Virus record (IMG/VR): IMGVR_UViG_3300033143_006101
Location: 62,001-126,000 of that record
Length of the DNA: 64,000 nt
Reading direction: 5' to 3' (one strand)
Within the stretch, counting starts at the first letter, position 1; each line of letters begins with the position of its first letter. A program made the position numbers and the translations under genes. Shown here piece after piece: positions 18,231 to 64,000 of the stretch. The notes under the pieces are model-generated. The model had not been told where the DNA came from, searched no databases, and saw only the letters and a list, made by a program, of their open reading frames with translations.

Positions 18231-19039
18231 GGTGTCTCCTCTTCTTCTGAAGTTTGTGCTTGCTGTGACAAATAAGATTCTGCACACTCTAGATAAATCT
18301 TACTTAAATAAGCAGAAAGTATGTTAAGTGTAAGTATAACTATACCTGGTTGTTCTTTAACTAATTCATCATAAGGCTCAGGAAATAGTACTCCTTGCTC
18401 TGCTCCCTCCTTACATTCCTCTAAGAATCCAAGAAGCTGATCAAAAGGAATTACTGCTTTTCCACCTTCAAAAATAAAATCTAATGTGTATGGTTCTCTT
18501 CTCATTGTAACCTCTTCTTTTGTTCTTCTAAAAGATCTAATATTTTATGACTACCAGTAAATTCAGTTGTAATCTTCCAAAGCTTTTCATTATCGCGTTT
18601 TCCTTCTAATTTAGCTTGTACAACTTTGCTTATTACATGATCATTTCTCATCAGTAACAGGAGTGCCAATTATATCTTTCTTTCTGATCGATTTAGGATA
18701 GCTAACATAAGAATTTATTTTCATATTTATTCTCCTATATATGGCAATCCACAATAGTAAGTAAGGTATTACTTGATATATCATCCATAAGCTTAGCTAT
18801 ATCAGTCCCAAATGCAGATAAATCTACACCTTCACCATTCCCTTTATCTTTATCCATATTCTTATACCTCCTAAAATTATAATTACCTCTATATACTATA
18901 AAGTATAAATACTCAATATTTTACAAAAAAAAAGTTAAGGTATTGCTACCCTAACTCAATTACTAGTGGATAAGTCTTATTAGGTAGGAATTGGTTAGGA
19001 TGGCAGTAATTCCACCAGTAATTATCTATGGATCCATAG

Positions 19040-19756
19040 TTACCACGGTTCTTCAGGCATACAGGTCCAATGCGATATATCTCCTCTAAATATTTCATTA
19101 GTGTCAGACCAATACCATATTTTATCTGTATAATTATAATATACTTTAAAACACTCTTTCATAAAAGGATCATATACTAATACAGTTATAGAAACAACGT
19201 GTATAGCTACAAGATTTGGATTAGTATTTCTAGGAGGAAAAGACCACGCTTGATTAACTTCTAGTTTAACCCATTGACCAAATCTACCTCTTTTTGCGTC
19301 TCTTTCTGCTCTTCGTTTTGCATGAAATTTTTTACGAGCGTCGATAGGATTGTCTGCATCGAAAGGATTATCTGGTAATGGCTCTCTAAGTTTAAAAATA
19401 GGATTATCTCTTTCTTTTTCCACCGATGCTGATTTTGTAATCATTTCTTCTGTAATCGGTACTTTACCCATACCTATTAATCCTAGTTGCTTCTCTAACT
19501 CTAATTTACGTACTGTAGGGTGTTGATTTGCTGATTTAAATAAAAGAGGAGGAGGAATTTGTAAACTATGCCTAAGCACCGCCATAATACGGTCCATCTC
19601 TTTGACATAGCTATCTCCCTGCTTTTGTGTATTACAAAGTTCTAGTATCTCAATATCATTAGGGCAATTTTCTGGTGTATAGCACAAGATACTTCCTTGT
19701 ACAATAGATGACGAAGTACCCTTTATACGTCCACATGGGTTATCGCATATCCTCAT
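19040..19756 (-). CDS. Hypothetical protein
   Basis: 238-aa ORF with SD aggag. Confidence 0.55.
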   Translation of the reverse strand: MRICDNPCGRIKGTSSSIVQGSILCYTPENCPNDIEILELCNTQKQGDSYVKEMDRIMAVLRHSLQIPPPLLFKSANQHPTVRKLELEKQLGLIGMGKVPITEEMITKSASVEKERDNPIFKLREPLPDNPFDADNPIDARKKFHAKRRAERDAKRGRFGQWVKLEVNQAWSFPPRNTNPNLVAIHVVSITVLVYDPFMKECFKVYYNYTDKIWYWSDTNEIFRGDISHWTCMPEEPW

Positions 19757-19959
19757 TATTATTCTCCTTTCTAACTATTTAGTTTATTCATTTTTATTTC
19801 TATATCTTCTATTAACTCTTCTAATGATATCTTTGTATCCCTTGTAGATACTGTTGTATCATTATATACTTTATCAATAGCTTCTCTAGCATCATCTATT
19901 AATTGCAAATGCCTAACCATATTTTTTCCATTATTATCCATTTATCCTCCTTATTATAT

Positions 19960-20496
19960 TTATACTATTGTAAGCATTTTTTCTATTTTCTTTTGAAAAT
20001 CTTTTGGTAATTCATATTTCTTTCCCGGGAAATTTCTATAACTATATTCGTATCCTAAAAATTCTACTGCAGCATCGTACATTTTAGCAGCATCTTCTTC
20101 AGTCCTTTTTGATCCTAAAGATACAAATCTACCATTAACATATATATAAGAATTATAACTCTGAATTCTTTTAGTCTTAACTTTGTATACTCCTTTATAT
20201 TTTTTACCTAATTTAGGAGGGGAGGTTCTTCTTAACTGAGAAAGCGTTACTTTTCTTAAATTTTTCTTTTGATGATTTAATCTAATATCATCAAGATGGA
20301 TAACATACTCACTTTTTTTACATTTCATTATAATTCTTTTCATAATAATAAGTTCCTTAGTACTAGGTTCTATTCGAAACACAGTTTTACGATTACACCC
20401 AGCTTGTAAGTAAGACCAATTAAATTGACTTAGAAAGTCATAATCCTCATTATCTACTAAAATATCATCTCCAGAATATGCTTTAATTTTTTTCAT
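19960..20496 (-). CDS. HNH-AP2 family endonuclease-like protein with degenerate HNH motif
   Basis: ILVDNEDY..L..FNW; M.RIIM..; VIH....LNH.K.NLR; AP2-like KYKGV...Y.S.I.VNG...LG...TEEDAAKMYDAA......Y..RNFP. Confidence 0.8.
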   Translation of the reverse strand: MKKIKAYSGDDILVDNEDYDFLSQFNWSYLQAGCNRKTVFRIEPSTKELIIMKRIIMKCKKSEYVIHLDDIRLNHQKKNLRKVTLSQLRRTSPPKLGKKYKGVYKVKTKRIQSYNSYIYVNGRFVSLGSKRTEEDAAKMYDAAVEFLGYEYSYRNFPGKKYELPKDFQKKIEKMLTIV

Positions 20497-20773
20497 AATT
20501 ACTTCTCCATATTTTCCCAATGCTATATTATCATCATCGCCCAAAGAATATACTTGGGGGGTGTACTTGGATCCTTTTTAATCATTTTTAATTTTTTAAT
20601 AACATCTTCAGTAAATCCATGAAGGTTCTTAAAAGCATTTACATACTGTTCTTCAATTATTGTATTATGTTTAATTACTTTCCCTTTACTATTGATAACT
20701 TCAACCATCCTTCCGCGTTCATCTAAATTCCATTTTCTTCTTCCACTTTCTTCTCTTATTTCAACAGACATAA

Positions 20774-21301
20774 TTAACCCTCCTGTAATACTTTTCTTAA
20801 ATACTTCTCACCCCGGCACATAAGCTGTATCACTTCTTTTGTAGTTTTAATATTCTCTTTACCCTTTATCTTTCTAATAAGGCTCCTCTTTCTTCTTAAT
20901 CCCCAAATGGCCGGTATAGTACAATGAAATACAAAAGCTAGTTCCCAATCATGATATTTATATGTACCATCTTTATTTTTTATATCCATTTTAAAAAACT
21001 TTATTGTTTCTGCTTCTGTCCAACCTCCTCCAAACCTTTCCCTCCTATCACCATATACACTGGTATAATCATGTGCATCTACTCTAATTTCATGTCTTTC
21101 TCTAAAATTTGCGTTCTTCTGTTGCTTCCAATGAGGATGCCTATTTTTAGCATATAATATATCTGTCATAGAATAGTTTGTTTTAGCCATCCATTTTCTA
21201 GTTACTATTCCTTTCTGACCAATAGTTAAAATACTATTCAGACATCTATCAATATACTGCATAGGTGTTTTTGAATTTAATATTTGTCTTTCAGTATACA
21301 T
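20774..21301 (-). CDS. Hypothetical basic protein (possible HTH)
   Basis: SD aggagg; WTEAE...D.ELAFVFHCTIPAIW.LRRK. Confidence 0.45.
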   Translation of the reverse strand: MYTERQILNSKTPMQYIDRCLNSILTIGQKGIVTRKWMAKTNYSMTDILYAKNRHPHWKQQKNANFRERHEIRVDAHDYTSVYGDRRERFGGGWTEAETIKFFKMDIKNKDGTYKYHDWELAFVFHCTIPAIWGLRRKRSLIRKIKGKENIKTTKEVIQLMCRGEKYLRKVLQEG

Positions 21302-23684: not shown

Positions 23685-24392
23685 TCATAATTGTTTTCCT
23701 AATTCTTCTACTTTTTCTTTTATGTTATCAGCTTTATAAATAGCACTTCCCACTATAGCATGCCATCTATCACCAGCAGCTTTACCAGCTTCAGTTATAT
23801 CACCACCTTGAGTAATGAGACCTGGGGAATAATAAGTAACTGGTCCAATACTTTCACTATTAGGCTCTTCTACTTCTATTACATTTTCTCTGTAATGTTT
23901 TATCCTATCGGGTTTATTTCCAGGTAATACAAAATCTGTTACACCCATAAGCATTGCGGTTTTATACATCTCATCTGGAGCGGTTTCTTTAATGTAAGAA
24001 AAAAATCCATCATGTGTCATTTCTCCACCAACAATAACATGAAGTCCATTACTCACACAGGCCCTAATCCATGATGTTTGAGTTTGTATACCAGCAAAAG
24101 GAAATAGTATAACAGCATCTACACCAGCATCTTTACAAACTTTTGCAAACTTTTCTCCCATAGCTGGAATATCATTGCCCGCTTTCTGGTGGTCGTATAT
24201 AATAGGTTTATTTGTAACTTTTCTAATAAATTCAGTAATAATTGCTAATCCATAAAACAAAGCAAGATTTAAACCTATTTTATACCCCCCAATTACTTCT
24301 AAACCACAAGTTGCTTTTACTATGTTTTCTAATTCTCCTAAAGTTGGTACATCACAAGCTACAATAATACTTTTGTTTCTTTTAATTAACAT
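23685..24392 (-). CDS. pyrF: Orotidine-5'-phosphate decarboxylase
   Basis: IIVACDV, GYKIG, YDHQKAGNDIP, GVDAVI, SPGLITQGG, AIVGSAIY. Confidence 0.85.
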   Translation of the reverse strand: MLIKRNKSIIVACDVPTLGELENIVKATCGLEVIGGYKIGLNLALFYGLAIITEFIRKVTNKPIIYDHQKAGNDIPAMGEKFAKVCKDAGVDAVILFPFAGIQTQTSWIRACVSNGLHVIVGGEMTHDGFFSYIKETAPDEMYKTAMLMGVTDFVLPGNKPDRIKHYRENVIEVEEPNSESIGPVTYYSPGLITQGGDITEAGKAAGDRWHAIVGSAIYKADNIKEKVEELGKQL

Positions 24393-24393
24393 T

Positions 24394-25158
24394 TTAATTC
24401 TCCTTTAATAATTTTTTTACAAATAATGGTCTGGTAAATAAAATGGAACCTAAAGCTATTTCTGTTACCCCCATTTCTTCTAATCTATGAACATCATCTA
24501 AACAAGTTATAGAAGAACCGGCTACACTAATCCCTTCTTTTTTTAATTCTTCTATATGACTAGCTATAAAATGCCAATTATATTTTTTAGCCCATTTACC
24601 TGATATAGCACCTATATTTATAAATCCTGTAGCTATTGAAGCTGGTACTGAATTAAGTGTTATTCTTTTTACTGATGTATTCCATTCTAATGTACTATTA
24701 GCTGCAAATAGATATGGATCCATCATCCAACTTAACTTTAAAGATAAAGGGAAAGGTGAATCTGGAATCCTTTTATTCTCGTGAGATATGATATTAGGAC
24801 AAGATAAATTAAGTTCTACCATAGGAAAATTAAAACCATATTTGTGCATAGTTGATATCATTGTTCTAAGTTCACTGTCATTTCCAGCTAAAGATGGAAT
24901 GAGTCTTTGTTTAATTTCTCTATCAAGTCCTAAATATTTCTGACACCACCAATGGAATCCATTATTGTGTAATCCTATTTTATTCCACATAGATTTTGCA
25001 AAAGGTATAGGAAAAAAATTATATGGTTTACCTCTTTTTGGTTTATAAGTAATTGTCTTAGCAACAAAAGGAAGTTCAGGAAAACCACTTATTAATTTAT
25101 GCCACCAGTAACCCTCTCCATAAAAACCCATTGTTGCTGAACTGTAAAAATATTTCAT
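24394..25158 (-). CDS. pyrD: Dihydroorotate dehydrogenase (class 1-like, compact)
   Basis: AKTIT, NKIGLHNNG, ELNLSCPN, LKLS, TLNS, GAISGK, IALGS; lies between pyrE and pyrF. Confidence 0.8.
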   Translation of the reverse strand: MKYFYSSATMGFYGEGYWWHKLISGFPELPFVAKTITYKPKRGKPYNFFPIPFAKSMWNKIGLHNNGFHWWCQKYLGLDREIKQRLIPSLAGNDSELRTMISTMHKYGFNFPMVELNLSCPNIISHENKRIPDSPFPLSLKLSWMMDPYLFAANSTLEWNTSVKRITLNSVPASIATGFINIGAISGKWAKKYNWHFIASHIEELKKEGISVAGSSITCLDDVHRLEEMGVTEIALGSILFTRPLFVKKLLKEN

Positions 25159-25172
25159 TTATTTCTCCTTAT

Positions 25173-25790
25173 TTAACAATTATATGTTGTAAAATAATCA
25201 GCAGTAAAGATACTTGTAACCATAGATGGATATTCACCATCTGGTTTTCCTTTAAGTAATGCATTTTCGATATTTAATTTACCATCGAATTCTTGTCTAT
25301 CAATAAGCACTATACAATGTATAGGTTCAAGACCGGCTTCTATCATTTTCTCTATCGCTGTAACTGTAGAACCACCTGTAGTGATAACATCTTCTACAAC
25401 TATAACCTTATCACCTTTTTCATAATTACCTTCTATCCATGCCTGTGTCCCATGACCTTTAGGTTTCTTACGAACTATAATGGGATTGAACCCTGTTTCT
25501 TTTACTACAGATAAAGCTAACGGATAAGCACCTGTTTCAATACCACCAATAGAATAATAATTTCCACCTACTACTATATTACCAGCTACTCTTTCTATAT
25601 ATTCTTTTTCAATAAACAAATCAAACAATACATTTCCTATACAACCATATCCTACAGGATCAAGCATAGTAGGTTTACAGTTAAAATATAATGGACTTTC
25701 TTTACCTGACTTTAATTTAAACGGTTCGTCAGGTCGATACAAAAAACTTTTCTCATAAAGTATTTTAAGTAACATGTCTTTACTATTCAT
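25173..25790 (-). CDS. pyrE: Orotate phosphoribosyltransferase
   Basis: FKLKSGKESPLYFNCK, VRKKPKGHGT, VIVVEDVITTGGS (PRPP loop), LIDRQE. Confidence 0.93.
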   Translation of the reverse strand: MNSKDMLLKILYEKSFLYRPDEPFKLKSGKESPLYFNCKPTMLDPVGYGCIGNVLFDLFIEKEYIERVAGNIVVGGNYYSIGGIETGAYPLALSVVKETGFNPIIVRKKPKGHGTQAWIEGNYEKGDKVIVVEDVITTGGSTVTAIEKMIEAGLEPIHCIVLIDRQEFDGKLNIENALLKGKPDGEYPSMVTSIFTADYFTTYNC

Positions 25791-28564: not shown

Positions 28565-28653
28565 TAGTTTTTTCACGAGACATAAAAAAAGAGAGTTTTT
28601 CAACTCTCTTCTATATATAAGTATGGATCCAAAGTTATTCATCTTCCATGATT

Positions 28654-28950
28654 TCACCTCCTCTTAGCCTCCAAGCAGTCTAATACCCACTGTAACCGAT
28701 TAACACTAATCTCCCCCTTAAACCACTCATCCCGGGGATACCGATTACACTTATCATAACCAAGCTTTAAGAGCTCAGCACGCACACTCTTCTCTACTTC
28801 CTTAGATACTACCTTAAATATACCAACCATAGAAACATAACTACTATGCGTCTTGTAATGCTTAATCCTGGCATGCGGGTCCTTGGAATAACCTACCTTA
28901 AACCTATCTCTATCTACTACTAAATATATATACATTTCTCGCTCAATCAT
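28654..28950 (-). CDS. GIY-YIG-like (T5orf172/MUG113) protein
   Basis: YIYLV...FKVGYSKDP..RI...E...EWF. Confidence 0.7.
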   Translation of the reverse strand: MIEREMYIYLVVDRDRFKVGYSKDPHARIKHYKTHSSYVSMVGIFKVVSKEVEKSVRAELLKLGYDKCNRYPRDEWFKGEISVNRLQWVLDCLEAKRR

Positions 28951-29454: not shown

Positions 29455-30553
29455 ACTCCTACTCTATAAATCCATCTTCAGGATCAGGCTTCGCACCCTT
29501 AAATATAGGCTTCCACCACTCACATGAATGCATGGGCTTAACATAACCTATACCACTATTCTTATCTACACATCTACTCTTAGCACTATAATATGAAGCA
29601 CACGTCTTACATTCCTTATCCTTCATATACATCCTCTCCTTATTAAAATTCAGCACATTGTACTCTATGTACAAGACCACGTAAACATGGTACCCACTCA
29701 TCTAACCCCGTGTCTTCTGTCCTATACATTAACTTATTATCTATACACTTCAACCTCTCGCTAGATACCTCATCACACTTGTAATTCTCTTGTGTCAATG
29801 GACGCTTAGCAGGTCTCTCCACCATCAATATCTGCAATATAATAAAACATATCAATAGTTTCAGTCTAATATCATACCTCCAATGCTCGCCTATTCCATA
29901 TACTTATATGTCTCCTACAAAAGTATCTTCCTTCATATAAGTCTTAGCTATCAATACTTGCAAATCAGTAACTGGTTTTCCATGATATATTAATGTACTA
30001 TCCTCTGTCTCTAATGTATCAACAACTTCATTATAATATTTATAAAAACGTGCGTTAGGATCTTCTTTATTTATTATCTCTATCGCTGCATCATAAGCTT
30101 CCCTTAGAGTAAGATAAGGCATCCTATCAAATTCCTTATCACCTTGAAGATTCGATATAATTACTTCATACCTTTCTCTTGACCCTCCAGCACTCCTAAT
30201 CAAACCATCTAAATTCTTAATTTTCTTAATATCCATACCACTTCTTCCAGTTATCAATAGATAAATAATATGAATTTTTTTCCATTCTTTAAGATTTTTT
30301 TCCAATAATAACCCAAAAAGCTACTAAATGTGCACTATAAAAGATAGAGACCAGGAGGCGAAATTCACCCCCTGAAATATACCAAGGAGAAGAACTATGA
30401 CCTATATCAAACAAAATAACAAAGGTAACTGGGAAACATGGGTTAATAACTACACACAAGTGACGAGATACCTACCTATATCATACATGTCTCGTCACTC
30501 ATTACGACATAACAGTCCAGTAGTACTATCCGCTGCGGGTTATGTAATTTTAT

Positions 30554-30610
30554 AAAAAATTATTAATTTTTTATAAAATTATTAATTTTTTATAAAATTA
30601 ATAATTTTTT
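30554..30610. repeat. Three tandem 19-bp units, each containing AAAATT-N3-AATTTT (operator-like)
   Basis: Units at 30554-30572, 30573-30591 and 30592-30610, ending 2 bp before the -35 hexamer. Confidence 0.75.
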
Positions 30611-30612
30611 AC

Positions 30613-30672: not shown

Positions 30673-30834
30673 ATGAAAAAAAGATTTTATTATAATGTAG
30701 CTTGCCCCACAAAAAAAGAACGAGATAATTTAAGACAATCAGTTAAAATTCTGGCAGCAAGATTAGGGGTCAATATATGGCAAGCAATAAAAATTGCTGT
30801 AGAAACTTTTAAATATAAAAAGGAAGATAAATGA
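30673..30834 (+). CDS. Small ribbon-helix-helix-like regulator (53 aa, not in the ORF track)
   Basis: MKKRFYYNVACPTKKERDNLRQSVKILAARLGVNIWQAIKIAVETFKYKKEDK shows a strand-helix-G-helix pattern; ATGA overlap with the next gene. Confidence 0.5.
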   Translation: MKKRFYYNVACPTKKERDNLRQSVKILAARLGVNIWQAIKIAVETFKYKKEDK

Positions 30835-32295: not shown

Positions 32296-32303
32296 CATAT
32301 AAA

Positions 32304-32570
32304 TGGATTGAACCTTAAGCGGTTTTCTTGATTCACTATCAGGCAATCCGAATTAGATAAAAGATTAGATTAGCTTAGCCAAGAATAGACCAGAGCAGAA
32401 AAGACAAGACGAGTCGGGCAGAATCTACAGCGATTATTAAGGTTCATTACCTTACTGCCCAAATTAGATAAAAGACTAGAATAGATCAGACTAGAATAGC
32501 AAAGAGCAGACTAGATTAGAACAGGAGCAGAACCTATAAGAGGTTATTGAGATTCACTATCTCACTACTC
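32304..32570 (+). ncRNA. Structured non-coding array: three tRNA-like cloverleaf units alternating with two (AGA-NN)10 tracts
   Basis: Units at 32304-32350, 32416-32460 and 32525-32570 share the same geometry with compensatory base changes. Tracts at 32351-32415 and 32461-32524 have strict 5-nt periodicity. Confidence 0.8.
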
Positions 32571-32683
32571 AAATTAAATTCCTCCTTCCCAACCCCAGCT
32601 TGCTCTTAGCTCACATGTGGACCCATAGCTACTTTTATAAGAATGTACTTGACAATTAGTACATATATATATAATAGTCATTT

Positions 32684-32878
32684 ATGGATAAATTTGATTT
32701 CGATAGAAGAAACAATAACCTCAAGTTAGCAAACAAAATAATGGACTACCTGGAAGATTGCCACATATCTGAATGGGAAGAAGGATTCTTAGAAGATATA
32801 CAACAACAACTCTAGTTCCCCTTCTTTACACTATCCGACGCTCAGAAAGATAAACTAGACACTATCCTGGATAAATAA
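32684..32878 (+). pseudogene. Small ORF interrupted by an in-frame TAG (32813-32815)
   Basis: MDKF...HISEWEEGFLEDIQQQL*FPFFTLSDAQKDKLDTILDK. The two parts together fit the small phage helical pattern SEWExxF....LSxxQxxKLxxI. Confidence 0.5.
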
Positions 32879-33151
32879 CCTTCACTCACCTCGTATGGTA
32901 TTTACATATCCTCAAATAAACGCTCCCACATCTCCCACTCCTCATCATCTATCTCCGGAATACCTTCAAAGAACATGTCTATTAGTAACTCCTCACAATC
33001 ATCCCAATCCAATACCTCACGCCTCCTGAAAAACTTCCTCAACCTCTCAAACATATCACTACCTCCTATCAGTCTTACTCTATATAAACGTAAAACTACC
33101 CCAAACCATGAACCAAAATAAACCCTCAACCTACCCCCAACTTGCCCCTGG

Positions 33152-33208
33152 CTCACTCCTAACTCGCGTATTACCCCCTCTCACTCCTAATTCACTCCTA
33201 ACTCGCGT
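33152..33208. repeat. Short direct repeats tcactcctaa(ctcgcgt)
   Basis: Copies start at 33153, 33181 and 33192. Confidence 0.7.
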
Positions 33209-33368
33209 GTGAACCGGTGTAATTAACTATGGATCCATAGTTACTTTATAAAATTATTAATTCTATTTCCAGCAAAAAATTAGTCTCACAGACAAGAGAG
33301 GCTGGGTACCCACCCGTCACCACCGGTGGTCAGATGTTGAAAGGGGTACATTATAGACCACCCTCAAT

Positions 33369-33473
33369 AATTGACCATCATCAAAAGTTGACCGGACTAC
33401 AATTGACCATCATCAAAAGTTGACTAGGCAATGACTGACCACACGGGATTATGTCCCCTGTCAAAAGTTGACC
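33369..33473. repeat. Iteron-like 24-bp direct repeats
   Basis: aattgaccatcatcaaaagttgac at 33369-33392 and 33401-33424; partial tcaaaagttgacc at 33461-33473. Confidence 0.8.
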
Positions 33474-33507
33474 TACTCAAATTTTTATGGAATAAAAGCC
33501 CAAAACT

Positions 33508-33751
33508 GTCAGTTTTTCGGAATTCCCAATACTCGGTGCAAGCTCGTCACAGGGATGGATGTCCTAGAGTTTGAGTCTGGTAAAGCAGTAATACCAGCAT
33601 AGACAGATATAGCTAATCATTAGACATATCTGTCTATGCTGGTGTTGGACTGAACAGATTTCCGGCTTTTGTCGGTTTTTCGGAATTTCCAATACTTGCA
33701 TCCAGTCAGTCTGGTTTGATAGATTGACTGCCTTATTGAGGATGGATGTCC
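33508..33751. repeat. Imperfect duplication bracketing a 15-bp-stem hairpin
   Basis: gtc(a/g)gtttttcggaatt(c/t)ccaatact at 33508 and 33671; ggatggatgtcc at 33553 and 33740; hairpin at 33596-33640. Confidence 0.7.
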
Positions 33752-34059
33752 AACAGGTAAGGTATAATAGCCCGATCTTGAAAGAGATCATAGCTGTTCT
33801 ATATGCGGGGTGAAAAGGTGCGAGAATTATGAACCGCACTATAGACTAATGATAGAGACATAGTTCTCTGTGGATTAAGACTTTCACTAACTATATATAG
33901 ACGAAGGTATGCGTCCACAAAGCCAACCTCCGGCTGAGGACTATAAACTATAGGGGGTGGGGTGATTAAGTTCACTTAAACGCCCCTCCTTTTCCCTGCC
34001 CATCCACCATGCATGTATTATGGTAGGGTGGTCAGAGATTGACCCCTTTGGAGGTTGTA

Positions 34060-34425: not shown

Positions 34426-34978
34426 TTTAAGTGCATGGTGACCAAGTGAACTTGGTCACTGGCGTACCTAAATTTATGGAGGTTTAACATGAGAAACACA
34501 TTAGTTATAGGACACGATGAGAAGCATCATAAGGCTAACAAGTTTGGTCGTTGTAAGTCTAAGTGTATACCTAGTACATGCTTAGAATATAACAAGTGCC
34601 AGACAGAATTAAACAAGCCTATGGTTCGCAAGATACTTGGACTTGCGTAGTTACAGGATAGACTAAGTTAACTTGGTCTATCCCGTAATTAAATTAACTA
34701 TGGATCCATAGTTAAACTTATGGGTTCTGGAGGAAAGTATGAAGCTAACATAGATAAACTCTTGGCGATCATTACATGAGATAATGTATCATGGTGCAAG
34801 TCGTCAAGAGCTTATACATTATGTCAGGAGGTATTATGAACGGTAGGATTAGTGATGAAAGACTCCATGCTTATGTTCTTAAAGCATGGAGTAAGATGAA
34901 GAGAGGTTATAAGAAGTCCCGTTAATGGGATTTCTTATGAGCTTTTAGCTCATAATCTAATTTAGGAGGTGTTAACAC

Positions 34979-35146: not shown

Positions 35147-36146
35147 TTAACTGCTGTTGCTTAGGCAGCTTGACTTGTCCTAAGCAACCAGGAGTTAACT
35201 AACTCAGGAGGTTAGAGATGAAAGACCAGATACTAAATGAAGTAGCATATGGTGTCGCTAAGTATGTTAAAGACAGACGAGCAGCAAGAGATCATCGTCA
35301 TCCTCTTGCCGGTTCTATTGTAGAACCTAGCCTCATTCCTCGTCGTACATATGCTCCACTCAATTCCATTGGCAACATCATCAAAGCCAAAGGACAGACC
35401 ATTGGAGTAAAGGTAGACACAGAGTAATTCCTTTAGCTTAGCTATGGGTTTAACTATGGATCCATAGCTAAGTCTAAGCACTTATTTAATAGGAGGTAAC
35501 ATGAAAACAAGAGTGTATTGTCACAAAACTCATGGATGGAAATCTGTTGACCAACTTGGGAATATCACTGATGCTCTCAATAAAAACAGGATGACTATCT
35601 CATGTAAACGGACAACTCATGTTAAGTAAAGAAGAACGTAAGAGACTACAGAATGCCATGAGGTATATCGACATGGCCAACGAGATAACAGATAATCTCG
35701 TGAAATCTGCAAGTAAAACCTACAAAGATTATGTCACCCGCAAGTAATTTAACTATGGATCCATAGATAACTATGGATCCATAGTAAAAATTAAAGGAGG
35801 TTATATGGACGGTAATTATGTCAGCATCAATCGTAGTGTAGTAACATGTAAGAAGCAGAAAGGTGAGAGAACAGCTATAGTACACAGGGGAGCATGTAAA
35901 CAGTGTCCCTTTCATCAAGACATAAGATGTCCAAACTAAATGTTATTCGATAGGATTATGACAGAACAAAACAAAAACCACAAAACAGATTATGATAGGT
36001 TAGTACGACTGTTAGAATCTATGGGAATGAGTACAGAACAAGCAAAACTCACCTCAAAAGACAGACTCAAACAATAAGGCATTATGTTATAGTTAACTGA
36101 TATCCTATAGTCAGGATATCAGCTTACTTTAAACCAGGAGGTACTT

Positions 36147-36659: not shown

Positions 36660-37207
36660 CACTGGAAGACTCCTTAGCAATAAGCCTAGGGAGTCTGTCA
36701 GTACTACGCAGATAGCTAGTACTACTATAAACCTCCCGCTGCCATCCCACATGTCCTAAATGAGAATTAACTATGGATCCATACTTGGACCACAGGAATA
36801 GTTAATCATGTGGGATGCGGGTGAGATGTTTCTAGTTATACGCATAGATATTAGTAATTTCACACATCATTACCCAAGTGTCTACCCAGCGATAGCCAAC
36901 ACCTTGTCCTACGTCCCATTGACTATATATGGCAAGTTGGGGCGTGGCTTGGGTGTGATTGGTGAGGTTATTGTCTGCCTCAAATTCTATACAGGAGGTA
37001 TTGCATGTCAGTTATAACAATTAAGTTTGAGGATCTCACTGAGAAGAAACAACAGGAGATACTAGAGGCTTATGAAATCGTGGATTACAAAGAAGTATTC
37101 CCATACGTACTGACTGAAATCTATGTCGAAGAGAATATAGACCTTATTACATCCTGTGAGGTTAAGCTACCGCCTTGTACACTATGTTCCTGTACAAAAT
37201 AATTATG

Positions 37208-37302
37208 TGGGAGAAGGCTGAGCGTAGTTTCAGCCTTCTCCCATAACACCGGACTACACTTGAGTAACACCGGACTACACTTGAGTAACACCGGACTACA
37301 CT
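37208..37302. repeat. 14-bp-stem hairpin followed by 21-bp tandem repeats
   Basis: tgggagaaggctga/tcagccttctccca, then taacaccggactacacttgag at 37244 and 37265 and a partial copy at 37286. Confidence 0.85.
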
Positions 37303-37545
37303 GGAATGTGTATTTAAGGGCTAATTTGGGCATGATATGTGTTACGGTTTGTGTAATGTGGTGTAATACGTGTCACGAATTGGATAATCGTGTTAAAGAG
37401 AGGATGTGTAATACAAAAAGAACACAAAGGCATACAATTTATATAAAGGTGACATAATTTGTCCCTTACTACAGAAAGAACACAAAGGCATACAATTGTG
37501 TTCTTTTATTGTAGACATATGGGAGAGGTTATGATAGGAGGTAGT

Positions 37546-50097: not shown

Positions 50098-50591
50098 TAT
50101 TGTTAATAATTAACAGCCTTACAAGTTCAAAAATTTGGAGGTAACAATGAACATTACATTTGAAACTGAAGTTTACTTTACTGTCAAAGTTAAAGTAACA
50201 CACTATACTCCCTATCGTCCAGCTCCATTTTGTTCTAACCACGACAGCCCTAACTTTGCTGATTCTGGAGATGACTTGGAGATTGAATATGATGCAACAG
50301 TTATTATGTATAAACAAGAGACTGATCCTAAAACTATGAAGACTACACAAGTTAAGGTAAAAGAATTCCCTTTACCTGATGAAATGTATGAAGTTTTAGA
50401 AGCACAGTTAAGTGAAGAAGCTATTCATGAAGCTGAATTATACAATGATATGCAACATGAAACTGCAATGGATGATAAATTTGAATCCATGAAAGATAGA
50501 TAGTTTAACTTTGGATCCATAGTTCTTGAATAGAACTATGGCTCAAGGGCTAAACCTAATGGTCTTATAAATCTTTAAAGGAGGAAAGGTT

Positions 50592-50834: not shown

Positions 50835-52009
50835 GTAACCTCGCCCCTGTTCTTAACTGGACAGGGGCAAGTTTATTTTAGGAGGTAATTTATGTACTAT
50901 GATATTAATGTTTCTAAGAATGGTAAGCATTATTTTGCAACAGATGAAAGATCAGCAACTACTCTTGATGAAACAACAGAGTTAGTAAATAAATTCAGAG
51001 AATGTTTTCCTAAAGAAGATGATTATGAAATAAGTGTAACCTTCTGGAAGAAAATAGGAGAGACAGTAGAGATATGAAAATAATACATTTAATAATAAGA
51101 GCTAAGAATCATGCTATTAAAGTTCCGGTAAAGCTACTGGTCTCTGATTTTGAGACAGTAGAAAAAGTAGCACACGATTACATTCGAAGTCATCCTGTTT
51201 GGATAAAGAAGATGTTCTCGACTACTTAGTTAAAGTATCTATTCTTGAGAGAGTAGATACTGAAGAGAAAGAGTTAGTATTAGAATAGTTTTATGTCTGC
51301 TCTTAAGCAGACACAAGATTATTTTTTATGGGGGTAATGATGAGTAGATTTATTGAACTACACAATCAAGAATTTGAATCGAGCTCAGTAGCTACTGAGC
51401 AATGGAATGAGTTTTATAAAGTAGCCGTAAAATACTTTAAAAGAATATTCAAATCTATTACTACACACGTCAAAATGAGTAAAAGTCACTTCTACTTTAG
51501 TGGATTCTTCACTACTAACTCAGGGAATGTATATTATTTTAGCATACCTGATGTTCGCTGGAGTGATGGGCAACTTCTTATTAGAAGGGCCGAAGACTAT
51601 CATGATTATACTGGTGGAGTGAATATGTATATTACTATAAATGACAATCTTCAAGAAAGTATAGCAAATAAAGTAATGTAAAGATTTAAGCCTGTGGGTT
51701 GTTGGATCCAACAGGCTTAAGTTTTTAATTAAGGAGGTAATTATATAATGGAGATATCTATTGAATATGGTAAGGGTAGTTATCCAACACTTACTGTTAA
51801 TATGCCAAACAGAAGTATATTAAATGATATGAATGCAATGTGTAGAGAATTAAAAAATACATATGGATTAATTAAATGGAAAATATTGTATGATGCTTTG
51901 CGTTTATATTATATTAAAACAAATAAAGAAAATGATATATTAGTAATAGATTAAATAGTTTTGTGTCTGCTTTTAAGCAGGCACAAGATTATTTTAAGGA
52001 GGTACAGAT

Positions 52010-54098: not shown

Positions 54099-55319
54099 AT
54101 GCAAGAAATTTACATGGAAAAAACTAGCGAGACTGGTGCAAAACTATTCTATGAGTATAAGATAGAAGAAAGCACTGTAAAATTTCGCTGGGGGCAGATT
54201 GGCAGTGACAACATTCAGTCTGATGAACGAACCTTTACAGAAGGTAAGAACATTGGTAAGAAGAATGAGAAGAGTCCGGAACAATGTTGTATAGAAGATA
54301 CGGCGAGAAGGGCTCGGAAGAAACATGAGCAGGGTTATGAAATTATCAAGGGTGAAGGATTTGTTATAGCTAACACAGGTAAAACTGTAAAGGCTACAGA
54401 TCTGAGTGTACCTAAACCCATGAAAGCTCAGACTCTTAAAGACCATTGGAAGAAAATGGATGGAGTTGACGAAGTATACTTCCAACCTAAGCTCGATGGT
54501 AATCGTGGTCTAATCAATATACGAACTGGAAAGATGTATTCCAGTGGTAGAAAAGAGATGACACATTTGCCTGAGATAGTTGAACAAGTAGTAAAAGCTT
54601 GTGAGCCTATCAAAGATGAAGTTGAATGGGTAGACGGTGAATTGTATTCACCCAAGCTTGTATTCAATGACCTTCAGTCTGTACTCAGTACATGGAAGAA
54701 CACTGAGAAAGAAGGACTTGCAGAATTACGGAAAGAAGTAAAGTTCTATTTGTTTGATGTCATATCAGACAAGCCTTTTAGTGAAAGGTTAGAGTTTATT
54801 AAAAAGCTCGAGTCAAATGATAAACTACAAATAGTAAAGACTATTGTAGGTCATCCACACGAAGCAATAGGTAGTCAGGATGACTTCATAGAACTACCTG
54901 AAGGAGTTGTTAGTCTTCATGATGTATTCATTGAAGAAGGTTATGAAGGTATTATGATTCGTACTGTCAAAACTTTAGTACGGAAGGACTGGGTAGATAA
55001 ACCATACGAATCCAAACGCTCTATGCAAATCTTCAAACACAAACTGTTTGATGATGAAGAGTTTGAAGTTATTGGTTTTGAGCCCGAAGAACATGACCCT
55101 ACAAAATTAGGGGCAGGAGTATTGAGGATGAAGAATGATGACACATTCCCTGCCAGACCTGCAATGACTGACGATTATAAAGCAGAGATATGGGCTAATC
55201 AAGATAAGTTTATTGGTCGATTAGCTACTATAAAATTTCAAGGTAAGTTTGCAGACACAGGCAAACCGAGGTTCCCCAGGTTAACCAAGTTCAGATTACC
55301 TGAGGATATTACTGAATAG
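54099..55319 (+). CDS. lig: ATP-dependent DNA ligase with N-terminal WGR-like domain
   Basis: RWGQIG and KKxEQGY (WGR-like); QPKLDGNR, DGELY, FYLFDV, EGYEGIMIR, KRS..IFKHK, KPRFP. Confidence 0.92.
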   Translation: MQEIYMEKTSETGAKLFYEYKIEESTVKFRWGQIGSDNIQSDERTFTEGKNIGKKNEKSPEQCCIEDTARRARKKHEQGYEIIKGEGFVIANTGKTVKATDLSVPKPMKAQTLKDHWKKMDGVDEVYFQPKLDGNRGLINIRTGKMYSSGRKEMTHLPEIVEQVVKACEPIKDEVEWVDGELYSPKLVFNDLQSVLSTWKNTEKEGLAELRKEVKFYLFDVISDKPFSERLEFIKKLESNDKLQIVKTIVGHPHEAIGSQDDFIELPEGVVSLHDVFIEEGYEGIMIRTVKTLVRKDWVDKPYESKRSMQIFKHKLFDDEEFEVIGFEPEEHDPTKLGAGVLRMKNDDTFPARPAMTDDYKAEIWANQDKFIGRLATIKFQGKFADTGKPRFPRLTKFRLPEDITE

Positions 55320-57338: not shown

Positions 57339-57383
57339 AATTTCTGCCTGCCCTTCGGGGCAAGCACAAGTTTTAATAGGAGG
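57333..57383 (+). repeat. 51-bp element identical to 57937-57987; the two copies flank a single gene
   Basis: gagtaaaatttctgcctgcccttcggggcaagcacaagttttaataggagg occurs twice; related copies at ~58298 and ~58677. Confidence 0.92.
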
Positions 57384-57390
57384 AAAATTT

Positions 57391-60082: not shown

Positions 60083-60149
60083 TTGGTTTACCCCACATTG
60101 CTATGGATCCATAGTAGTGTGGTGCAAATTTTTTATAAGGAGGTATCAT

Positions 60150-61429: not shown

Positions 61430-61963
61430 ATGAAAATAGATACAGTGAATAAATTTCTTATGATTTTATTACTTATTGCAATAGGATCATTCTTCTTTTG
61501 TGAGAAGGGTGGTTCCAACGAATCCAGTACAGCACAAGCAGAAACCTGCCCCACATGTGACGTGTGTGAAGTATGCGAAGTGTGTGAGGTATGTGAAGTG
61601 TGTGAGGTATGTCCGGAAACGGATCCGCCAGGTATTATTGGATGGAAGTTCTGGAGTAATAACTTTCCTATTACTAGTGGAGACACAATTGATAGTAATA
61701 GAATATTCTACCTTGAAATAGATGAAAGTTTGGATTCTGTTAATTCCACTATTACAATATTTAAACTCGGGGTTAATAGTTATACAGAAGTTACCCCACC
61801 TGCTGGATATGGTTGGCAATCTGGTAATACAGTATTGCAGATCTTAGTATCCGGTGGTAATTGGTGGCCTGTAGGATCATATGTTATCGTAGGCACTCTA
61901 ATTGATAGTGCAGGTAATGCTTTTACTCTGCCACCTTTCTTATTTACTACAGTTGATCCGTAA
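61430..61963 (+). CDS. Membrane/lipoprotein-like protein with a (CxV)n Cys repeat
   Basis: Hydrophobic signal ending FFFC, polar linker, CPTCDV(CEV)5CP, then a beta-sandwich-like domain. Confidence 0.65.
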   Translation: MKIDTVNKFLMILLLIAIGSFFFCEKGGSNESSTAQAETCPTCDVCEVCEVCEVCEVCEVCPETDPPGIIGWKFWSNNFPITSGDTIDSNRIFYLEIDESLDSVNSTITIFKLGVNSYTEVTPPAGYGWQSGNTVLQILVSGGNWWPVGSYVIVGTLIDSAGNAFTLPPFLFTTVDP

Positions 61964-62023
61964 GAATTATAGGACTTCAAGTGTATCTTGGAGTCTTATA
62001 TTTTTTATTAAGGAGGAAGTATT

Positions 62024-62365
62024 ATGACAGAGATATTAGACAATGGTCTTGAGATAGAAAAGACTTTAGTTGTTAGTACAATTCATATAATGGAAGCTGA
62101 CGATGCTTTTTTTACTCAACTTCAAATTGAGCCTTTTAAATTAACACCCCCACTCATTATAGATGATTTAACATATGGTTGGTATATTTATATACCTTCT
62201 GATGAGAATGATTTTAATGAGACTTGTAAATCTATTCAAGAAGATACTAGCTTGAGTGATATCTTTTTGGACTTGTTTAAATTAACACGAGAACTTGACT
62301 GTCGCTATCTCAAACTAGATAGGGATGGGCCTATCGCACCTGATCTTCCCCAGGGTGATTGGTAA
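62024..62365 (+). CDS. DUF5983-like protein
   Basis: LVVST.HI...D; YGW.I; C.YL.LD.DGP....LP..DW. Confidence 0.55.
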   Translation: MTEILDNGLEIEKTLVVSTIHIMEADDAFFTQLQIEPFKLTPPLIIDDLTYGWYIYIPSDENDFNETCKSIQEDTSLSDIFLDLFKLTRELDCRYLKLDRDGPIAPDLPQGDW

Positions 62366-64000
62366 ACAACATGAAAACTTAACCTACAACTGTGGATCCA
62401 TAGCAGATGTAGGGTAATTTTTTATGAGGAGGTATTATATATTGACAGATGAGCAACAGAAAAAGTATCTAGAACAGGGTGGTATTCGTTGTCCTTATTG
62501 TAATAGTGTAGACATTACAACCACACAACCTGTACAAACTGATATAGGTATTGCTTGGCAGAATATTTGTTGTAACGATTGTACAGAAGAATGGACAGAT
62601 GAAAATACTCTTACTAATGTAAAACCAAGTTAGATTGATGCTTGCCCTGAGGCAAGCATGAGTTTAATATAGGAGGTAATATGAATCCATACGAAAAAGA
62701 AGGGTATCTTAAACCGGTAATTCCGTATGTTCAAAGAAGTCCCGAAACAGAAAAACTGCATAAAGCAGAAGAGAATATGATAGAAGCTATATTTAAAACA
62801 ACACAGGCATTTAGATCAATTTTTAAAACAAAAGGACTCTATCAACATATCTGGAAAGAAGCTTTACCAGAAGTATTAGTACAGGCTCTTGAAGGTTTTG
62901 ATAGACCAGCAGCAGAACTTGCAGCTATAGCTTTTCTGGAAAAACAGGGTTATACTATTACAAAATAGGAGGTGCTATGAAAGTACCCAATAAGAAAAAG
63001 TTAAAGAAGTTAGATGTTTTCAGAGCAACAGATCAACCAGAGGAGTGTAGTCAATGTAGTAGCCGTACTGACTTTGAGAATATAAATGAAATCCAAGAGT
63101 ACCACGAGTGTCTTAATTGCGGTTTTGAATTTATACTTGATCATACAGAGGACTACTATCATGAGTTCTCCGTCACCTTTGACATAGAAAGTACAATGGA
63201 TCCTGACGACATTCCTTATGCAGAATTGATAAGGCTCTGCGGGGATTGGCAGACTACCTGGAGAAAAATCCAGATAGAAATGCTTTCAAATATGAAGATG
63301 GAGACCCTGACAAATAGTATATTCAATATGCGGTAATTCTATTAATACTTGAATTACTGCACATTTATTATATTAAGGAGGTAACATGAAATATACAGTA
63401 AAAGCAGTAAAATTTTCACCTGGACATGATAGTTGCTGTATGAATTGTAACCTATATCACGGCAAGAAAAAAATTGCAAGTGTATGGGATGATTCTTATG
63501 GTGGTGGCTATCAGTATACATGGGTATCTGACGAAGAAGAAAAAGAATTTTTAAATCATGTAAAAAGCCAGCCTCAATGGGAATCAGAATTTACTAAAGG
63601 TAAAAAGTTTAATATGACTAATGATATCTATATTCATAGATTAATTAAGCAAGTTGAAAAAGAAAAAGAGGAAAAGAAAAGAATTAAACTGTATGAAAAA
63701 GCAATAGTTGTAATGACTAAAGATGACGACAGCGATTATTCTTATTTTCGCATGCCGAAAGGTAAGACAGTTGCCATGATACCCAAAGAAGTATTACGTA
63801 ATTGGGTATCCGATATTGAGAGAGATTTAAAACCCGATGAATATATTGCTAACACAAACATTTAACTAACACACCCAAGCTACATGCTTGGGTGTGTTAG
63901 TTAACAGGAGGTACTATGGTAAAAGGAACTAAAACACTTCTCGCCAGAAGAGAAGGTAAAGATTATTTCTTTACATATCTTGTAGAAGATCAAGATGAAA

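What the first reader, a model, noticed from the sequence alone, without database searches (positions are those of the whole stretch)
19026..62404. Dispersed intergenic 18-bp palindrome AACTATGGATCCATAGTT concentrated at the start of the early block
Seen: about 12 copies or variants, all intergenic: 19026, 28621, 32615, 33224, 34694, 35451, 35751+35769 (tandem), 36769, 50507, 60101 and 62388. Six lie within 33.2-36.8 kb. At 60101 and 62388 the palindrome forms the apex of a longer hairpin; at 35451 and 50507 one half pairs with a flanking arm. The core is GGATCC/GATC. Inference: an operator of a dimeric phage regulator (stoperator-like), a hairpin promoter for a virion RNA polymerase (N4-like logic; few sigma70 promoters were noticed in this block), or an injection/packaging signal.
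Basis: partly seen in the sequence, partly recalled or inferred. Interest (0 to 1): 0.7.

Follow-up and report, generated by a model that had tools for sequence, protein, structure and literature searches.

The report
Dispersed GGATCC-centred palindrome in a jumbo phage
A 20-bp perfect palindrome recurs about 18 times between genes of an uncultured 253-kb phage, mostly at the start of an early-gene block, and its 8-bp centre is the most over-represented word in the genome; it looks like a family of binding sites for a still unidentified symmetric DNA-binding protein, probably a regulator of early genes.

Summary
The window holds 11 copies within 3 mismatches of AACTATGGATCCATAGTT, against 0.06 expected, plus one decayed copy. 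Six lie in 33.2-36.8 kb. The window is part of a 252,876-bp, 33% G+C IMG/VR phage genome. That genome has about 18 copies of the consensus TAACTATGGATCCATAGTTA, and 15 of the 17 best are intergenic.

New findings:
- The central octamer TGGATCCA occurs 54 times against 2.4 expected.
- It is the top outlier of all 65,536 octamers inside genes under a synonymous-codon shuffle.
- A 218-kb relative has none, and avoids GGATCC.

The centre never varies. Most changes to the arms break pairing. Weak sites keep motif-like bases, not complementarity. This pattern fits graded binding sites for a two-fold symmetric protein on double-stranded DNA. The protein is not identified. A 53-aa ribbon-helix-helix-like early gene is only a weak lead.

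The likeliest role is as operators or roadblocks that time or shut off early transcription by the host RNA polymerase. This is inferred, not shown.

An RNA or single-strand hairpin role stays open, because five window copies sit in significantly stable longer hairpins, two of them terminator-like. I found no phage RNA polymerase, so the N4-like promoter idea has no support. No transcript data were available.

The parts
33225..33242 (.). Perfect copy, the first of the early-block cluster. It lies about 550 nt downstream of a sigma70-like promoter at 32649 and in front of an 800-nt non-coding stretch.
34696..34713 (.). Perfect copy in an intergenic spacer, 47 nt after a stop codon and just after a separate hairpin.
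35452..35469 (.). Copy with 1 mismatch. A third half-site at 35437 and flanking arms give a 20-bp alternative hairpin (35430-35480, dG -24.8, z -5.3).
35751..35786 (.). Two directly abutting copies (35751-35768 and 35769-35786), each with 1 mismatch, 5 nt after a stop codon and 19 nt before the next start codon.
36769..36786 (.). Copy with 1 mismatch near the apex of a long imperfect hairpin (arms 36719-36753 and 36807-36841; dG -45.9, z -4.7).
50507..50524 (.). Copy with 1 mismatch, 5 nt after a stop codon. A third half-site at 50533 gives an alternative hairpin (dG -18.5, z -4.9).
60099..60116 (.). Copy with a perfect 14-bp core at the apex of a 13-bp-stem hairpin followed by a T run, so terminator-like. 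The outer positions changed on both sides and keep pairing.
62388..62405 (.). Copy with 3 mismatches inside a longer hairpin followed by a T run (dG -12.6, z -2.6).
28619..28636 (.). Copy with 2 mismatches in the leftward early block. In transcription order it follows a T5orf172/GIY-YIG-like gene, and is then followed by an intrinsic terminator and a TTGACA-N17-TATATT promoter.
19024..19041 (.). Copy with 1 mismatch that abuts the stop codon of a leftward gene.
32613..32630 (.). Decayed copy with 5 mismatches and centre GGACCC. It shares the downstream flank of the 33225 copy and lies just upstream of the promoter-like site at 32649.
51700..51713 (.). Weak intergenic site TGTTGGATCCAACA: the same octamer core in a different 14-bp palindrome.
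24715..24722 (.). Core octamer TGGATCCA inside a gene. It is one of about 33 such coding copies in the genome; 16390 and 45136 are the others in the window.
32649..32678 (+). Sigma70-like promoter candidate (TTGACA, 18 nt, AATAGT) at the head of the rightward early block. Six strong palindrome copies follow within 4 kb.
30673..30834 (+). First gene of the rightward block, 53 aa. It is a speculative candidate for the binding protein: its topology is compatible with ribbon-helix-helix, it has no homologue anywhere, and it is absent from the relative G003.
   Evidence: all weak

Best explanation
The element is the core of a 20-bp perfect palindrome, TAACTATGGATCCATAGTTA. I read it as the high-affinity end of a family of graded binding sites on double-stranded DNA for a two-fold symmetric (dimeric or tetrameric) sequence-specific protein. 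Because of the lineage-specificity below, that protein is probably encoded by this phage lineage. The protein reads the central TGGATCCA and, more weakly, the flanking CTA/TAG. About 18 strong sites sit in the short non-coding spacers between genes. Eight of the 11 perfect 12-mers are in the rightward early block, and six lie within the first 4 kb after its promoter. Dozens of weak octamer sites are kept throughout the genome, including inside genes. Inferred mechanism: once the protein accumulates, it occupies the strong sites inside the early operons. There it acts as an operator or roadblock for the host RNA polymerase and times or shuts off early transcription. The weak sites may hold a reservoir of the protein on phage DNA or serve a second, genome-wide role. 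Shown: the sites, their symmetry, their distribution, their selection and their lineage-specificity. Inferred: that a protein binds them, which protein, and the effect on transcription.
For: Copies far exceed chance: 11 against 0.06 expected in the window, and 15 of the 17 best genome copies lie in the 13% of the genome that is intergenic. Positions 6-13 (TGGATCCA) are invariant in all 18 copies, and the 4 central bases that would form a hairpin loop are themselves self-complementary. That is expected for a symmetric site on duplex DNA but not for a hairpin loop. Most pairs with an arm change are unpaired, about 15 of 21 (my tally). Pairing exceeds column shuffles only marginally: 84.0% against 81.1%, reached by 17 of 500 shuffles. 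TGGATCCA occurs 54 times against 2.4 expected and is the most over-represented octamer of the genome, above the Shine-Dalgarno word. Inside genes it occurs 32 times against 8.8 under a synonymous-codon shuffle and ranks first of 65,536 octamers. GGATCC is the commonest of all 960 hexamers with four G/C. In the 36 weak octamer sites the flanks are no more complementary than expected, but each flank keeps motif-like bases: W next to the core, C at -3 and G at +3. So base identity is selected, not pairing. Apart from the ribosome-binding site, no other motif recurs in intergenic DNA. The sigma70-type promoters (TTGACA-N17-TATATT, about 10 copies) do not overlap the palindrome, so the sites lie within transcription units. 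The family is lineage-specific. The 218-kb relative G003 shares 121 of 424 proteins but has 0 TGGATCCA and 2 GGATCC against 15 expected. At 8 orthologous positions with identical amino acids it uses other codons. The exact 18-mer is absent from 185,579 species' genomes and from other IMG/VR contigs.
Against: No binding protein was identified. Pfam and PHROG scans of about 300 predicted proteins found no classical repressor. The only protein-DNA modelling job was not folded by the tool and counts for nothing. Five of the 11 window copies sit in longer hairpins that are significantly more stable than shuffles, two of them followed by T runs, and six loci carry a third half-site that allows alternative hairpins. 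A pure duplex-binding model does not predict this. No copy overlaps a recognisable promoter, so a classical operator role is not shown. There are no transcript data. My gene calls are crude; at least one 'intergenic' octamer, at 16390, is inside the ligase gene.
Confidence: 0.45

Rival explanations
1. RNA-level, or single-stranded DNA, hairpin element. When transcribed, the palindrome folds into a 7-9-bp stem with a GAUC loop. It would serve as a processing, stability, termination or antitermination signal in the long early transcripts, perhaps read by a phage RNA-binding protein. Being palindromic, it gives the same hairpin in leftward and rightward operons.
For: Copies lie between co-directional genes, usually 0-26 nt after a stop codon. 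Extended hairpins with z of -4.5 to -5.3 occur at 35452, 36769, 50507 and 60099. The copies at 60099 and 62388 are followed by T runs, like intrinsic terminators. Third half-sites allow mutually exclusive hairpins at six loci. There is a weak excess of pairing and covariation: 17 and 15 of 500 shuffles reach the observed values.
Against: It does not explain the excess of the bare octamer inside genes, which cannot fold. It does not explain why the loop itself is self-complementary. Most arm changes break pairs. Weak sites keep base identity rather than complementarity. Most copies lack a T run. There is no Rfam match.
Confidence: 0.2
2. Genome-organisation or segregation sites. On this reading the palindromes are parS/NBS/OB-like loading sites for the phage's ParB-family CTPase-like protein, or for an adaptor to its tubulin homologue. 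They would be clustered near a putative origin and scattered elsewhere, and any silencing of early genes would be a side effect, as with KorB.
For: The phage encodes a 338-aa protein with a ParB N-terminal domain and the GERR motif. Its best structural relatives by sequence are Spo0J, ParB and Noc. It also encodes a tubulin/FtsZ-family protein. The site architecture, a 16-20-bp palindrome with a 6-bp palindromic centre in many dispersed copies, resembles parS, Noc sites and the KorB OB sites (own knowledge; PMC11790492). The cluster lies beside a 1.7-kb non-coding region with iteron-like repeats at a switch in strand and GC skew.
Against: ParB orthologues at 36-68% identity sit on relatives' contigs, 22.8 kb in all, that hold no GGATCC. 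G003, which has the orthologue, has no TGGATCCA. The ParB gene's own upstream region carries a different palindrome, TTGACTTTAAAGTCAA, twice, and that palindrome is conserved in the 68%-identical relative. The gene lies 110 kb from the cluster, in an operon with SbcCD-like genes. The octamer sites are spaced as a random scatter would be.
Confidence: 0.1
3. The family is linked to methylation or restriction. GGATCC/GATC in the palindrome would be the target of the phage's own methyltransferases. The sites would act as methylation-sensitive switches, or be kept for self-marking phage DNA.
For: Two C5-cytosine methyltransferase genes lie at genome 126,445-128,420, bracketed by palindrome copies at 124,388, 127,494 and 128,694. 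The genome also holds an MT-A70 adenine methylase and a YccV-like 'hemimethylated DNA-binding' domain protein. The relative avoids GGATCC 7-fold, as if the hosts restrict it, while this phage does not.
Against: Protection explains a loss of avoidance, not a 5-fold excess or a 20-bp palindrome. The transition neighbours GGATTC and GGATCT are not depleted, so there is no very-short-patch-repair signature. There is no BamHI-family nuclease hit. The methylases' specificity is unknown.
Confidence: 0.08
4. A selfish or recombinational palindromic repeat (MITE/REP-like, or a boundary of shuffled gene cassettes like the promoter-stem-loop cassettes of T4-type phages) that spread through intergenic DNA without a regulatory role.
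For: Copies separate many tiny, lineage-specific early genes. Partial half-site duplications next to copies look like footprints. The genome is rich in homing endonuclease genes: 8 HNH_3 hits plus GIY-YIG-like genes.
Against: At 20 bp it is too short to carry anything. There is no tyrosine recombinase hit. Copies do not track the HNH genes. Spread of a repeat does not explain the octamer excess created by synonymous codon choice inside genes.
Confidence: 0.06
5. N4-like hairpin promoters read by a virion RNA polymerase.
For: The hairpin could extrude. The copies cluster at the head of an early block that has few sigma70-like promoters.
Against: No RNA polymerase domain was found in the genome, and none of the giant proteins matches a virion polymerase family. 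N4 promoters are strand-specific, with a conserved loop purine and a fixed initiation region (PMC4496689). Here the element is identical on both strands and nothing downstream is conserved. The giant proteins are shared with G003, which lacks the motif.
Confidence: 0.03

Closest known systems
Stoperators of Cluster A mycobacteriophages (L5 gp71-type repressor)
   Same: More than 20 copies of one short motif are dispersed through a phage genome, mostly in short intergenic spaces inside transcription units. They are proposed to stop elongating host RNA polymerase (PMC9283540).
   Different: Stoperators are asymmetric 13-mers bound by a monomer, and they work in only one orientation relative to transcription. 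This element is a perfect 20-bp palindrome. No homologous repressor and no tyrosine integrase were found, and its core is also enriched inside genes.
KorB OB operators of plasmid RK2, and ParB-parS or Noc-NBS sites generally
   Same: These are palindromic sites of 13-16 bp with a palindromic centre, present in a dozen or more dispersed copies on one replicon and bound by a dimeric ParB-family protein that can silence genes (PMC11790492; Noc and parS from own knowledge).
   Different: The phage's ParB-like gene does not co-vary with the motif. Relatives that have the orthologue lack GGATCC, and a different conserved palindrome sits at the gene itself.
Operators of ribbon-helix-helix repressors (MetJ met-box, Arc, Mnt, CopG)
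   Same: The most conserved bases are at the dyad centre, an 8-bp palindromic unit. Extra adjacent half-sites suggest binding of higher-order oligomers (own knowledge of these systems).
   Different: The ribbon-helix-helix candidate here rests only on topology and insignificant fold matches. Known operators of this class are few and promoter-proximal, not genome-wide.
N4 early hairpin promoters
   Same: A short inverted repeat at the head of early genes, capable of extrusion.
   Different: See the rival explanation: no virion polymerase, no strand specificity and no conserved initiation region (PMC4496689).
Dispersed C1 operators of phage P1 and the dispersed SopB centromere sites of phage-plasmid N15
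   Same: One protein controls or marks many scattered sites on a large phage genome (own knowledge, not checked here).
   Different: P1 operators are asymmetric 17-mers at promoters. N15 has only four sites. Neither shows enrichment of a core word inside coding sequence.

Membership tests
Stoperator / Cluster A immunity-repressor sites | Many copies dispersed over the genome in short intergenic spaces within operons | tested here: met
   About 18 copies; 15 of the 17 best are intergenic, between co-directional genes
Stoperator / Cluster A immunity-repressor sites | Asymmetric 13-mer whose orientation follows the direction of transcription | tested here: not met
   The consensus is a perfect 20-bp palindrome, and when copies are oriented by transcription the deviations are symmetric; the feature is as stated in PMC9283540
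Stoperator / Cluster A immunity-repressor sites | Cognate repressor and temperate lifestyle | tested here: inconclusive
   No tyrosine integrase hit and no repressor-type family among about 300 proteins scanned. Family lists were capped at 25, and serine recombinases were not searched.
N4-type hairpin promoter | A virion-packaged single-subunit RNA polymerase encoded by the phage | tested here: not met
   No PF00940 hit. Giant ORFs gave no polymerase family in PHROGs or Pfam. A very divergent enzyme cannot be excluded.
N4-type hairpin promoter | Strand-specific hairpin with variable stem bases kept paired and a conserved initiation region downstream | tested here: not met
   The element is identical on both strands, covariation is only marginal, and nothing is conserved downstream
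ParB-parS / Noc-NBS / KorB-OB | Palindromic site of 13-16 bp or more, in several copies on the replicon | tested here: met
ParB-parS / Noc-NBS / KorB-OB | ParB-family protein with the CTP-binding GERR motif encoded by the replicon | tested here: met
   P0121: ParB_N E 1.5e-17, and a GERRFR motif aligned to Spo0J
ParB-parS / Noc-NBS / KorB-OB | The sites belong to that protein (linkage or co-variation of site and protein) | tested here: not met
   Contigs and a genome with the orthologue have no or almost no GGATCC. A different palindrome is conserved at the gene.
Intrinsic (Rho-independent) terminator | Stable stem-loop directly followed by a T run | tested here: not met
   Met only at 60099 and 62388. 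The other copies lack a T run, and at 28619 and genome 22225 a separate terminator follows the palindrome.
Ribbon-helix-helix operator | A ribbon-helix-helix protein that binds the site | not testable with these tools
   The candidate at window 30673-30834 has an extended N-terminus plus two helices (pLDDT 76.7). CopG, VapB and ParG are among the top Foldseek hits but at E > 1. The atlas similarity of 0.57 is at chance level. The protein-DNA complex job was not folded.
REP/MITE-like mobile palindromic repeat | Associated transposase (RAYT/TnpA) and target-site footprints | not tested
   Only tyrosine recombinases were searched. No Y1-transposase search was made.

The most novel reading that the evidence does not exclude
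The phage positively selects one palindromic octamer, TGGATCCA, throughout its 253-kb genome, including by synonymous codon choice inside genes, while purging most other palindromes. The word would serve as a self-mark or loading signal for a lineage-specific phage protein. That protein would coat, organise or distinguish phage DNA, and at the extended 20-bp sites it would also silence the early operons. This would be a genome-wide, site-density-based control system, analogous to Noc or KorB on bacterial replicons but not described for a virulent jumbo phage.
Probability: 0.15. Interest if true: 0.8.

Novelty: new variant of a known kind. Interest (0 to 1): 0.55.

Why it matters
Regulatory logic of uncultured jumbo phages is almost unknown. 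This genome offers a clean, testable case: one motif, about 18 strong sites concentrated at the head of an early operon, and about 36 weak sites kept by selection even within genes. All this sits in a genome that otherwise avoids palindromes (GCGC 0 of 194 expected) and whose relative avoids this very hexamer. Palindromes are also a liability for phages, since they can trigger Lamassu/DdmABC defence (PMC11707656). Keeping them therefore implies a benefit. Finding the binding protein would give a new operator-repressor or roadblock pair. It might also give an example of a phage marking its whole genome with a binding word.

Tried and rejected
- **Close relatives:** there is no DNA match in GenBank phages. 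The exact 18-mer is absent from IMG/VR and from 185,579 species' genomes, and occurs only as three unrelated single hits in JGI metagenomes. The 14-mer core gives only single chance hits.
- **DNA-polymerase-based locus search:** it found nothing.
- **A wasted protein search:** one search went on a gene that PHROGs weakly called terminase. It is a cellular HerA-like ATPase.
- **Transcript evidence:** the first run search listed nothing. The second found only a marine-sediment DNA run holding a 272-nt contig of a relative's Gam-like gene, so there is no RNA evidence.
- **Protein-DNA complex prediction:** I submitted the 53-aa candidate, but the tool does not fold that kind of complex. This is no evidence either way.
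- **Very-short-patch-repair explanation of the GGATCC excess:** rejected, because the transition neighbours are not depleted.
- **Regular spacing of sites:** rejected, because the gaps fit a random scatter.
- **Position bias within genes:** none.
- **Association with homing-endonuclease genes:** none.
- **Candidate binders set aside:** the 217-aa HTH protein looks like a sigma factor, and the 158-aa HTH_23 protein looks like an endonuclease DNA-binding domain.
- **Families searched and not found in this genome:** HU, AbrB and BamHI.
- **HTH_3 and RHH_1:** only sub-threshold hits.

Full report
**Where the window lies.** The window is bases 62,001-126,000 of a 252,876-bp IMG/VR virus record. The record has 33.3% G+C and a 72-bp end overlap, so it is a circular assembly and the physical ends are unknown. 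It comes from JGI sample 3300033143. A second sample holds a 99.98%-identical 4.6-kb piece. It is a tailed jumbo phage with these recognisable genes:
- structural: tail sheath, baseplate and portal;
- DNA metabolism: family-A DNA polymerase fused to a UDG-like domain, UvsX-like recombinase, SbcCD-like nuclease, ribonucleotide reductase with an intein, two DNA ligases and a Mu Gam-like protein;
- others: a tubulin homologue, a sigma-factor-like protein, a ParB-N-domain protein, two C5 methyltransferases, an MT-A70 methylase and at least eight HNH endonuclease genes.

Strong AGGAGG ribosome-binding sites and recurring TTGACA-N17-TATATT promoters show that it uses a bacterial sigma70-type polymerase. 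No phage RNA polymerase domain was detected.

**The observation.** AACTATGGATCCATAGTT occurs 11 times in the window with up to 3 mismatches, against 0.06 expected. There is also a decayed copy at 32613-32630. Six copies lie in 33.2-36.8 kb, including an abutting pair. Genome-wide there are about 18 copies. Of the 17 with at most 1 mismatch in the 14-bp core, 15 lie in the 13% of the genome that my gene calls leave intergenic. For the cluster, the depositor's own gene calls agree. Aligned, the consensus is a perfect 20-mer, TAACTATGGATCCATAGTTA. The central TGGATCCA is invariant in all 18, and conservation decays outwards. Apart from the ribosome-binding site, it is the only recurring intergenic motif.

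**Selection on the core octamer across the genome.** The central octamer TGGATCCA occurs 54 times against 2.4 expected from base composition. That makes it the most over-represented octamer of the genome, ahead of the Shine-Dalgarno word. About 32 copies lie inside genes. When synonymous codons are shuffled within each gene, the mean is 8.8-9.1. By this test TGGATCCA ranks first of all 65,536 octamers, followed by its own overlapping words. GGATCC (116 copies) is the commonest of all 960 hexamers with four G/C. The sites are scattered as a random process would scatter them, with no bias along genes and at a similar density in every block. Only the extended form concentrates in the rightward early block, which holds 8 of the 11 perfect 12-mers. 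In the 36 octamer sites that are not part of a full palindrome, the flanks are not more complementary than expected. Each flank nevertheless prefers the motif's own bases: A/T next to the core, C at -3 and G at +3. There is therefore a continuum from perfect 20-mer to bare octamer, as for binding sites of graded affinity.

**The family is lineage-specific.** A search with an alignment of the ParB-like protein found a true relative, G003 (IMGVR_UViG_3300017963_000192, 217,703 bp). It shares 121 of 424 predicted proteins, including syntenic structural and replication modules. The early blocks are not shared. G003 has no TGGATCCA at all, 2 GGATCC against 15 expected, and no recurrent palindrome of its own. 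Both genomes avoid G+C-containing palindromes heavily. In this genome GCGC is 0 of 194 expected, and G003 has zero copies of about twenty hexamers. This phage is the exception for GGATCC. At the 40 GGATCC sites in genes alignable to G003, none is GGATCC there. In the 8 cases with identical amino acids, G003 uses other codons.

**Duplex site or hairpin?**

For recognition of duplex DNA by a symmetric protein:
- The centre is the most conserved part, and its four middle bases are themselves self-complementary. A hairpin loop has no need of that.
- About 15 of the 21 pairs with an arm change are unpaired (my tally from the alignment).
- Formal counting gives 84.0% paired cells against 81.1% in shuffles, with 17 of 500 shuffles as high. 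The covariation score is 0.158 against 0.112, with 15 of 500 as high. By the tool's own caveats this is marginal.
- The bare octamer is selected inside genes, where it cannot fold.
- Weak sites keep base identity, not complementarity.

For a hairpin role:
- The regions around 35452, 36769, 50507 and 60099 fold far better than shuffles (z -4.5 to -5.3). The regions at 60099 and 62388 end in T runs like terminators.
- Six loci have a third half-site, which would allow alternative hairpins.

I weigh the first set more heavily, but the second is not explained away. Extended arms could arise from template switching at a palindrome, or the element could act at both levels.

**Position relative to transcription signals.** None of the roughly 25 good sigma70-type promoter candidates overlaps a copy. 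Copies sit between co-directional genes, typically 0-26 nt after a stop codon and 19-70 nt before the next start codon. The rightward early block starts with a promoter-like site at 32649. A decayed copy lies just upstream of it, and six strong copies follow within 4 kb, ahead of about 40 kb of small early genes that include the Gam-like gene. A protein bound there would be well placed to block elongation into the whole block. That is the basis for the operator/roadblock reading, which remains an inference.

**Who binds?** This is unknown.
- The ParB-like protein has the GERR motif and resembles Spo0J and Noc. However, its orthologues occur in relatives without GGATCC, and its own upstream region carries a different, conserved palindrome.
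- The 217-aa HTH protein looks like a sigma factor, and the 158-aa HTH_23 protein looks like an endonuclease DNA-binding domain.
- No HU, AbrB or BamHI family hit was found, and HTH_3 and RHH_1 gave only sub-threshold hits.
- The first gene of the rightward block encodes a 53-aa protein with no homologue among 5.8 billion proteins, and it is absent from G003. Its model shows an extended N-terminus plus two helices (pLDDT 76.7). Its best fold matches are CopG, VapB and ParG, but at E > 1. The atlas similarity to ribbon-helix-helix clusters is at chance level. A ribbon-helix-helix dimer would fit a site whose centre is the most conserved part, but this is a lead and not a finding.
- The protein-DNA modelling job was not folded and carries no weight.

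**Comparison with known systems.** In working logic the nearest system is the stoperator system of Cluster A mycobacteriophages. It has many intergenic sites inside operons that stop elongation (PMC9283540). Membership fails, because stoperators are asymmetric, orientation-dependent and bound by a monomer. In site architecture and dispersion the element resembles parS, Noc and KorB-OB sites (PMC11790492), but the link to the phage's ParB-like gene was tested and not met. N4 hairpin promoters (PMC4496689) fail on the polymerase, on strand specificity and on the initiation region. Only two copies qualify as terminators.

**Verdict.** This is a real, strongly non-random, lineage-specific family of palindromic sites. 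Most likely (0.45) they are binding sites for an unidentified symmetric DNA-binding protein that controls early transcription. An RNA or single-strand hairpin function is the main rival (0.2). The genome-wide selection of the core octamer, in a phage lineage that otherwise purges palindromes, is the most unusual feature and deserves a bench test.

Noticed in passing
whole genome (G000) and relative G003: Extreme avoidance of G+C-containing palindromes. In this genome GCGC occurs 0 times against 194 expected, and about 15 hexamers (AGCGCT, CGATCG, GCTAGC, GACGTC, AGGCCT and others) are absent. In G003 about 20 hexamers are absent and CGCG occurs once. A set that G003 avoids is not avoided here: GGATCC, CCCGGG, CTGCAG, CAGCTG, TCCGGA, GCATGC. 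This may be linked to the extra methylases or to a 558-aa thymidylate-synthase-like protein (genome 728-2404) that G003 lacks.
   Followed up: partly
window 30545-30611: A 67-bp A+T-only nested palindrome (arms 93-100% complementary) lies exactly at the divergence point of the leftward and rightward early blocks, beside sigma70-like promoters. It could be a bidirectional control region or an unwinding element.
   Followed up: no
window 32300-34040: A 1.7-kb stretch has almost no credible ORF and raised G+C (39%). It holds 32-bp tandem units with AAAGTTGACC-type iterons (33369-33480), two 27-nt repeats 163 nt apart (33507 and 33670), a hairpin with 28-nt arms (33590-33646) and C-rich 39-bp repeats (33135-33212). 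There is no Rfam match. It could be an origin, a packaging region or non-coding RNAs.
   Followed up: partly
window 37237-37311 and 37409-37497: Three 21-bp tandem units, and a 31-nt repeat 58 nt apart, lie in another poorly coding spacer of the early block.
   Followed up: no
L043:1960-2100 (genome about 210,140-210,280) and L052:2040-2160: The palindrome TTGACTTTAAAGTCAA occurs twice, with a 22-nt direct repeat, in the divergent region upstream of the ParB-like gene. It is conserved in the relative whose orthologue is 68% identical. It is likely the operator or parS of that module, or a bidirectional promoter.
   Followed up: partly
genome 126,445-128,420 (just beyond the window's end): Two adjacent C5-cytosine methyltransferase genes are bracketed by palindrome copies at 124,388 and 128,694, with a weak site (TGTTGGATCCATAA) between them.
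   Followed up: partly
window 28640-28655 and 34730-34750: Four-codon mini-ORFs with strong ribosome-binding sites lie directly beside two palindrome copies: ATG GAA GAT GAA TAA on the minus strand at 28619, and ATG AAG CTA ACA TAG after 34696. This may be chance.
   Followed up: no
window 23685-25790 (minus strand): The leftward early block carries pyrimidine-synthesis-type genes: OMP decarboxylase, a dihydroorotate-dehydrogenase-like gene and a phosphoribosyltransferase.
   Followed up: no
window 15954-17060 and 54099-55319: The same phage carries both an NAD-dependent and an ATP-dependent DNA ligase.
   Followed up: no
genome 131,919-133,319: A HerA-like DUF853 ATPase is 55-67% identical to cellular proteins of diverse bacteria, apparently a recent acquisition. 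PHROGs weakly calls it terminase.
   Followed up: partly
genome 143,088-145,458 (minus strand): A tubulin/FtsZ-family protein lies next to a sigma-factor-like protein and a small gene with a weak RHH_1 match. All are conserved in G003.
   Followed up: partly
genome 137,366-140,401 and 197,489-200,482: Intein-type insertions (Hint plus LAGLIDADG domains) interrupt a 1011-aa protein and the ribonucleotide reductase.
   Followed up: no
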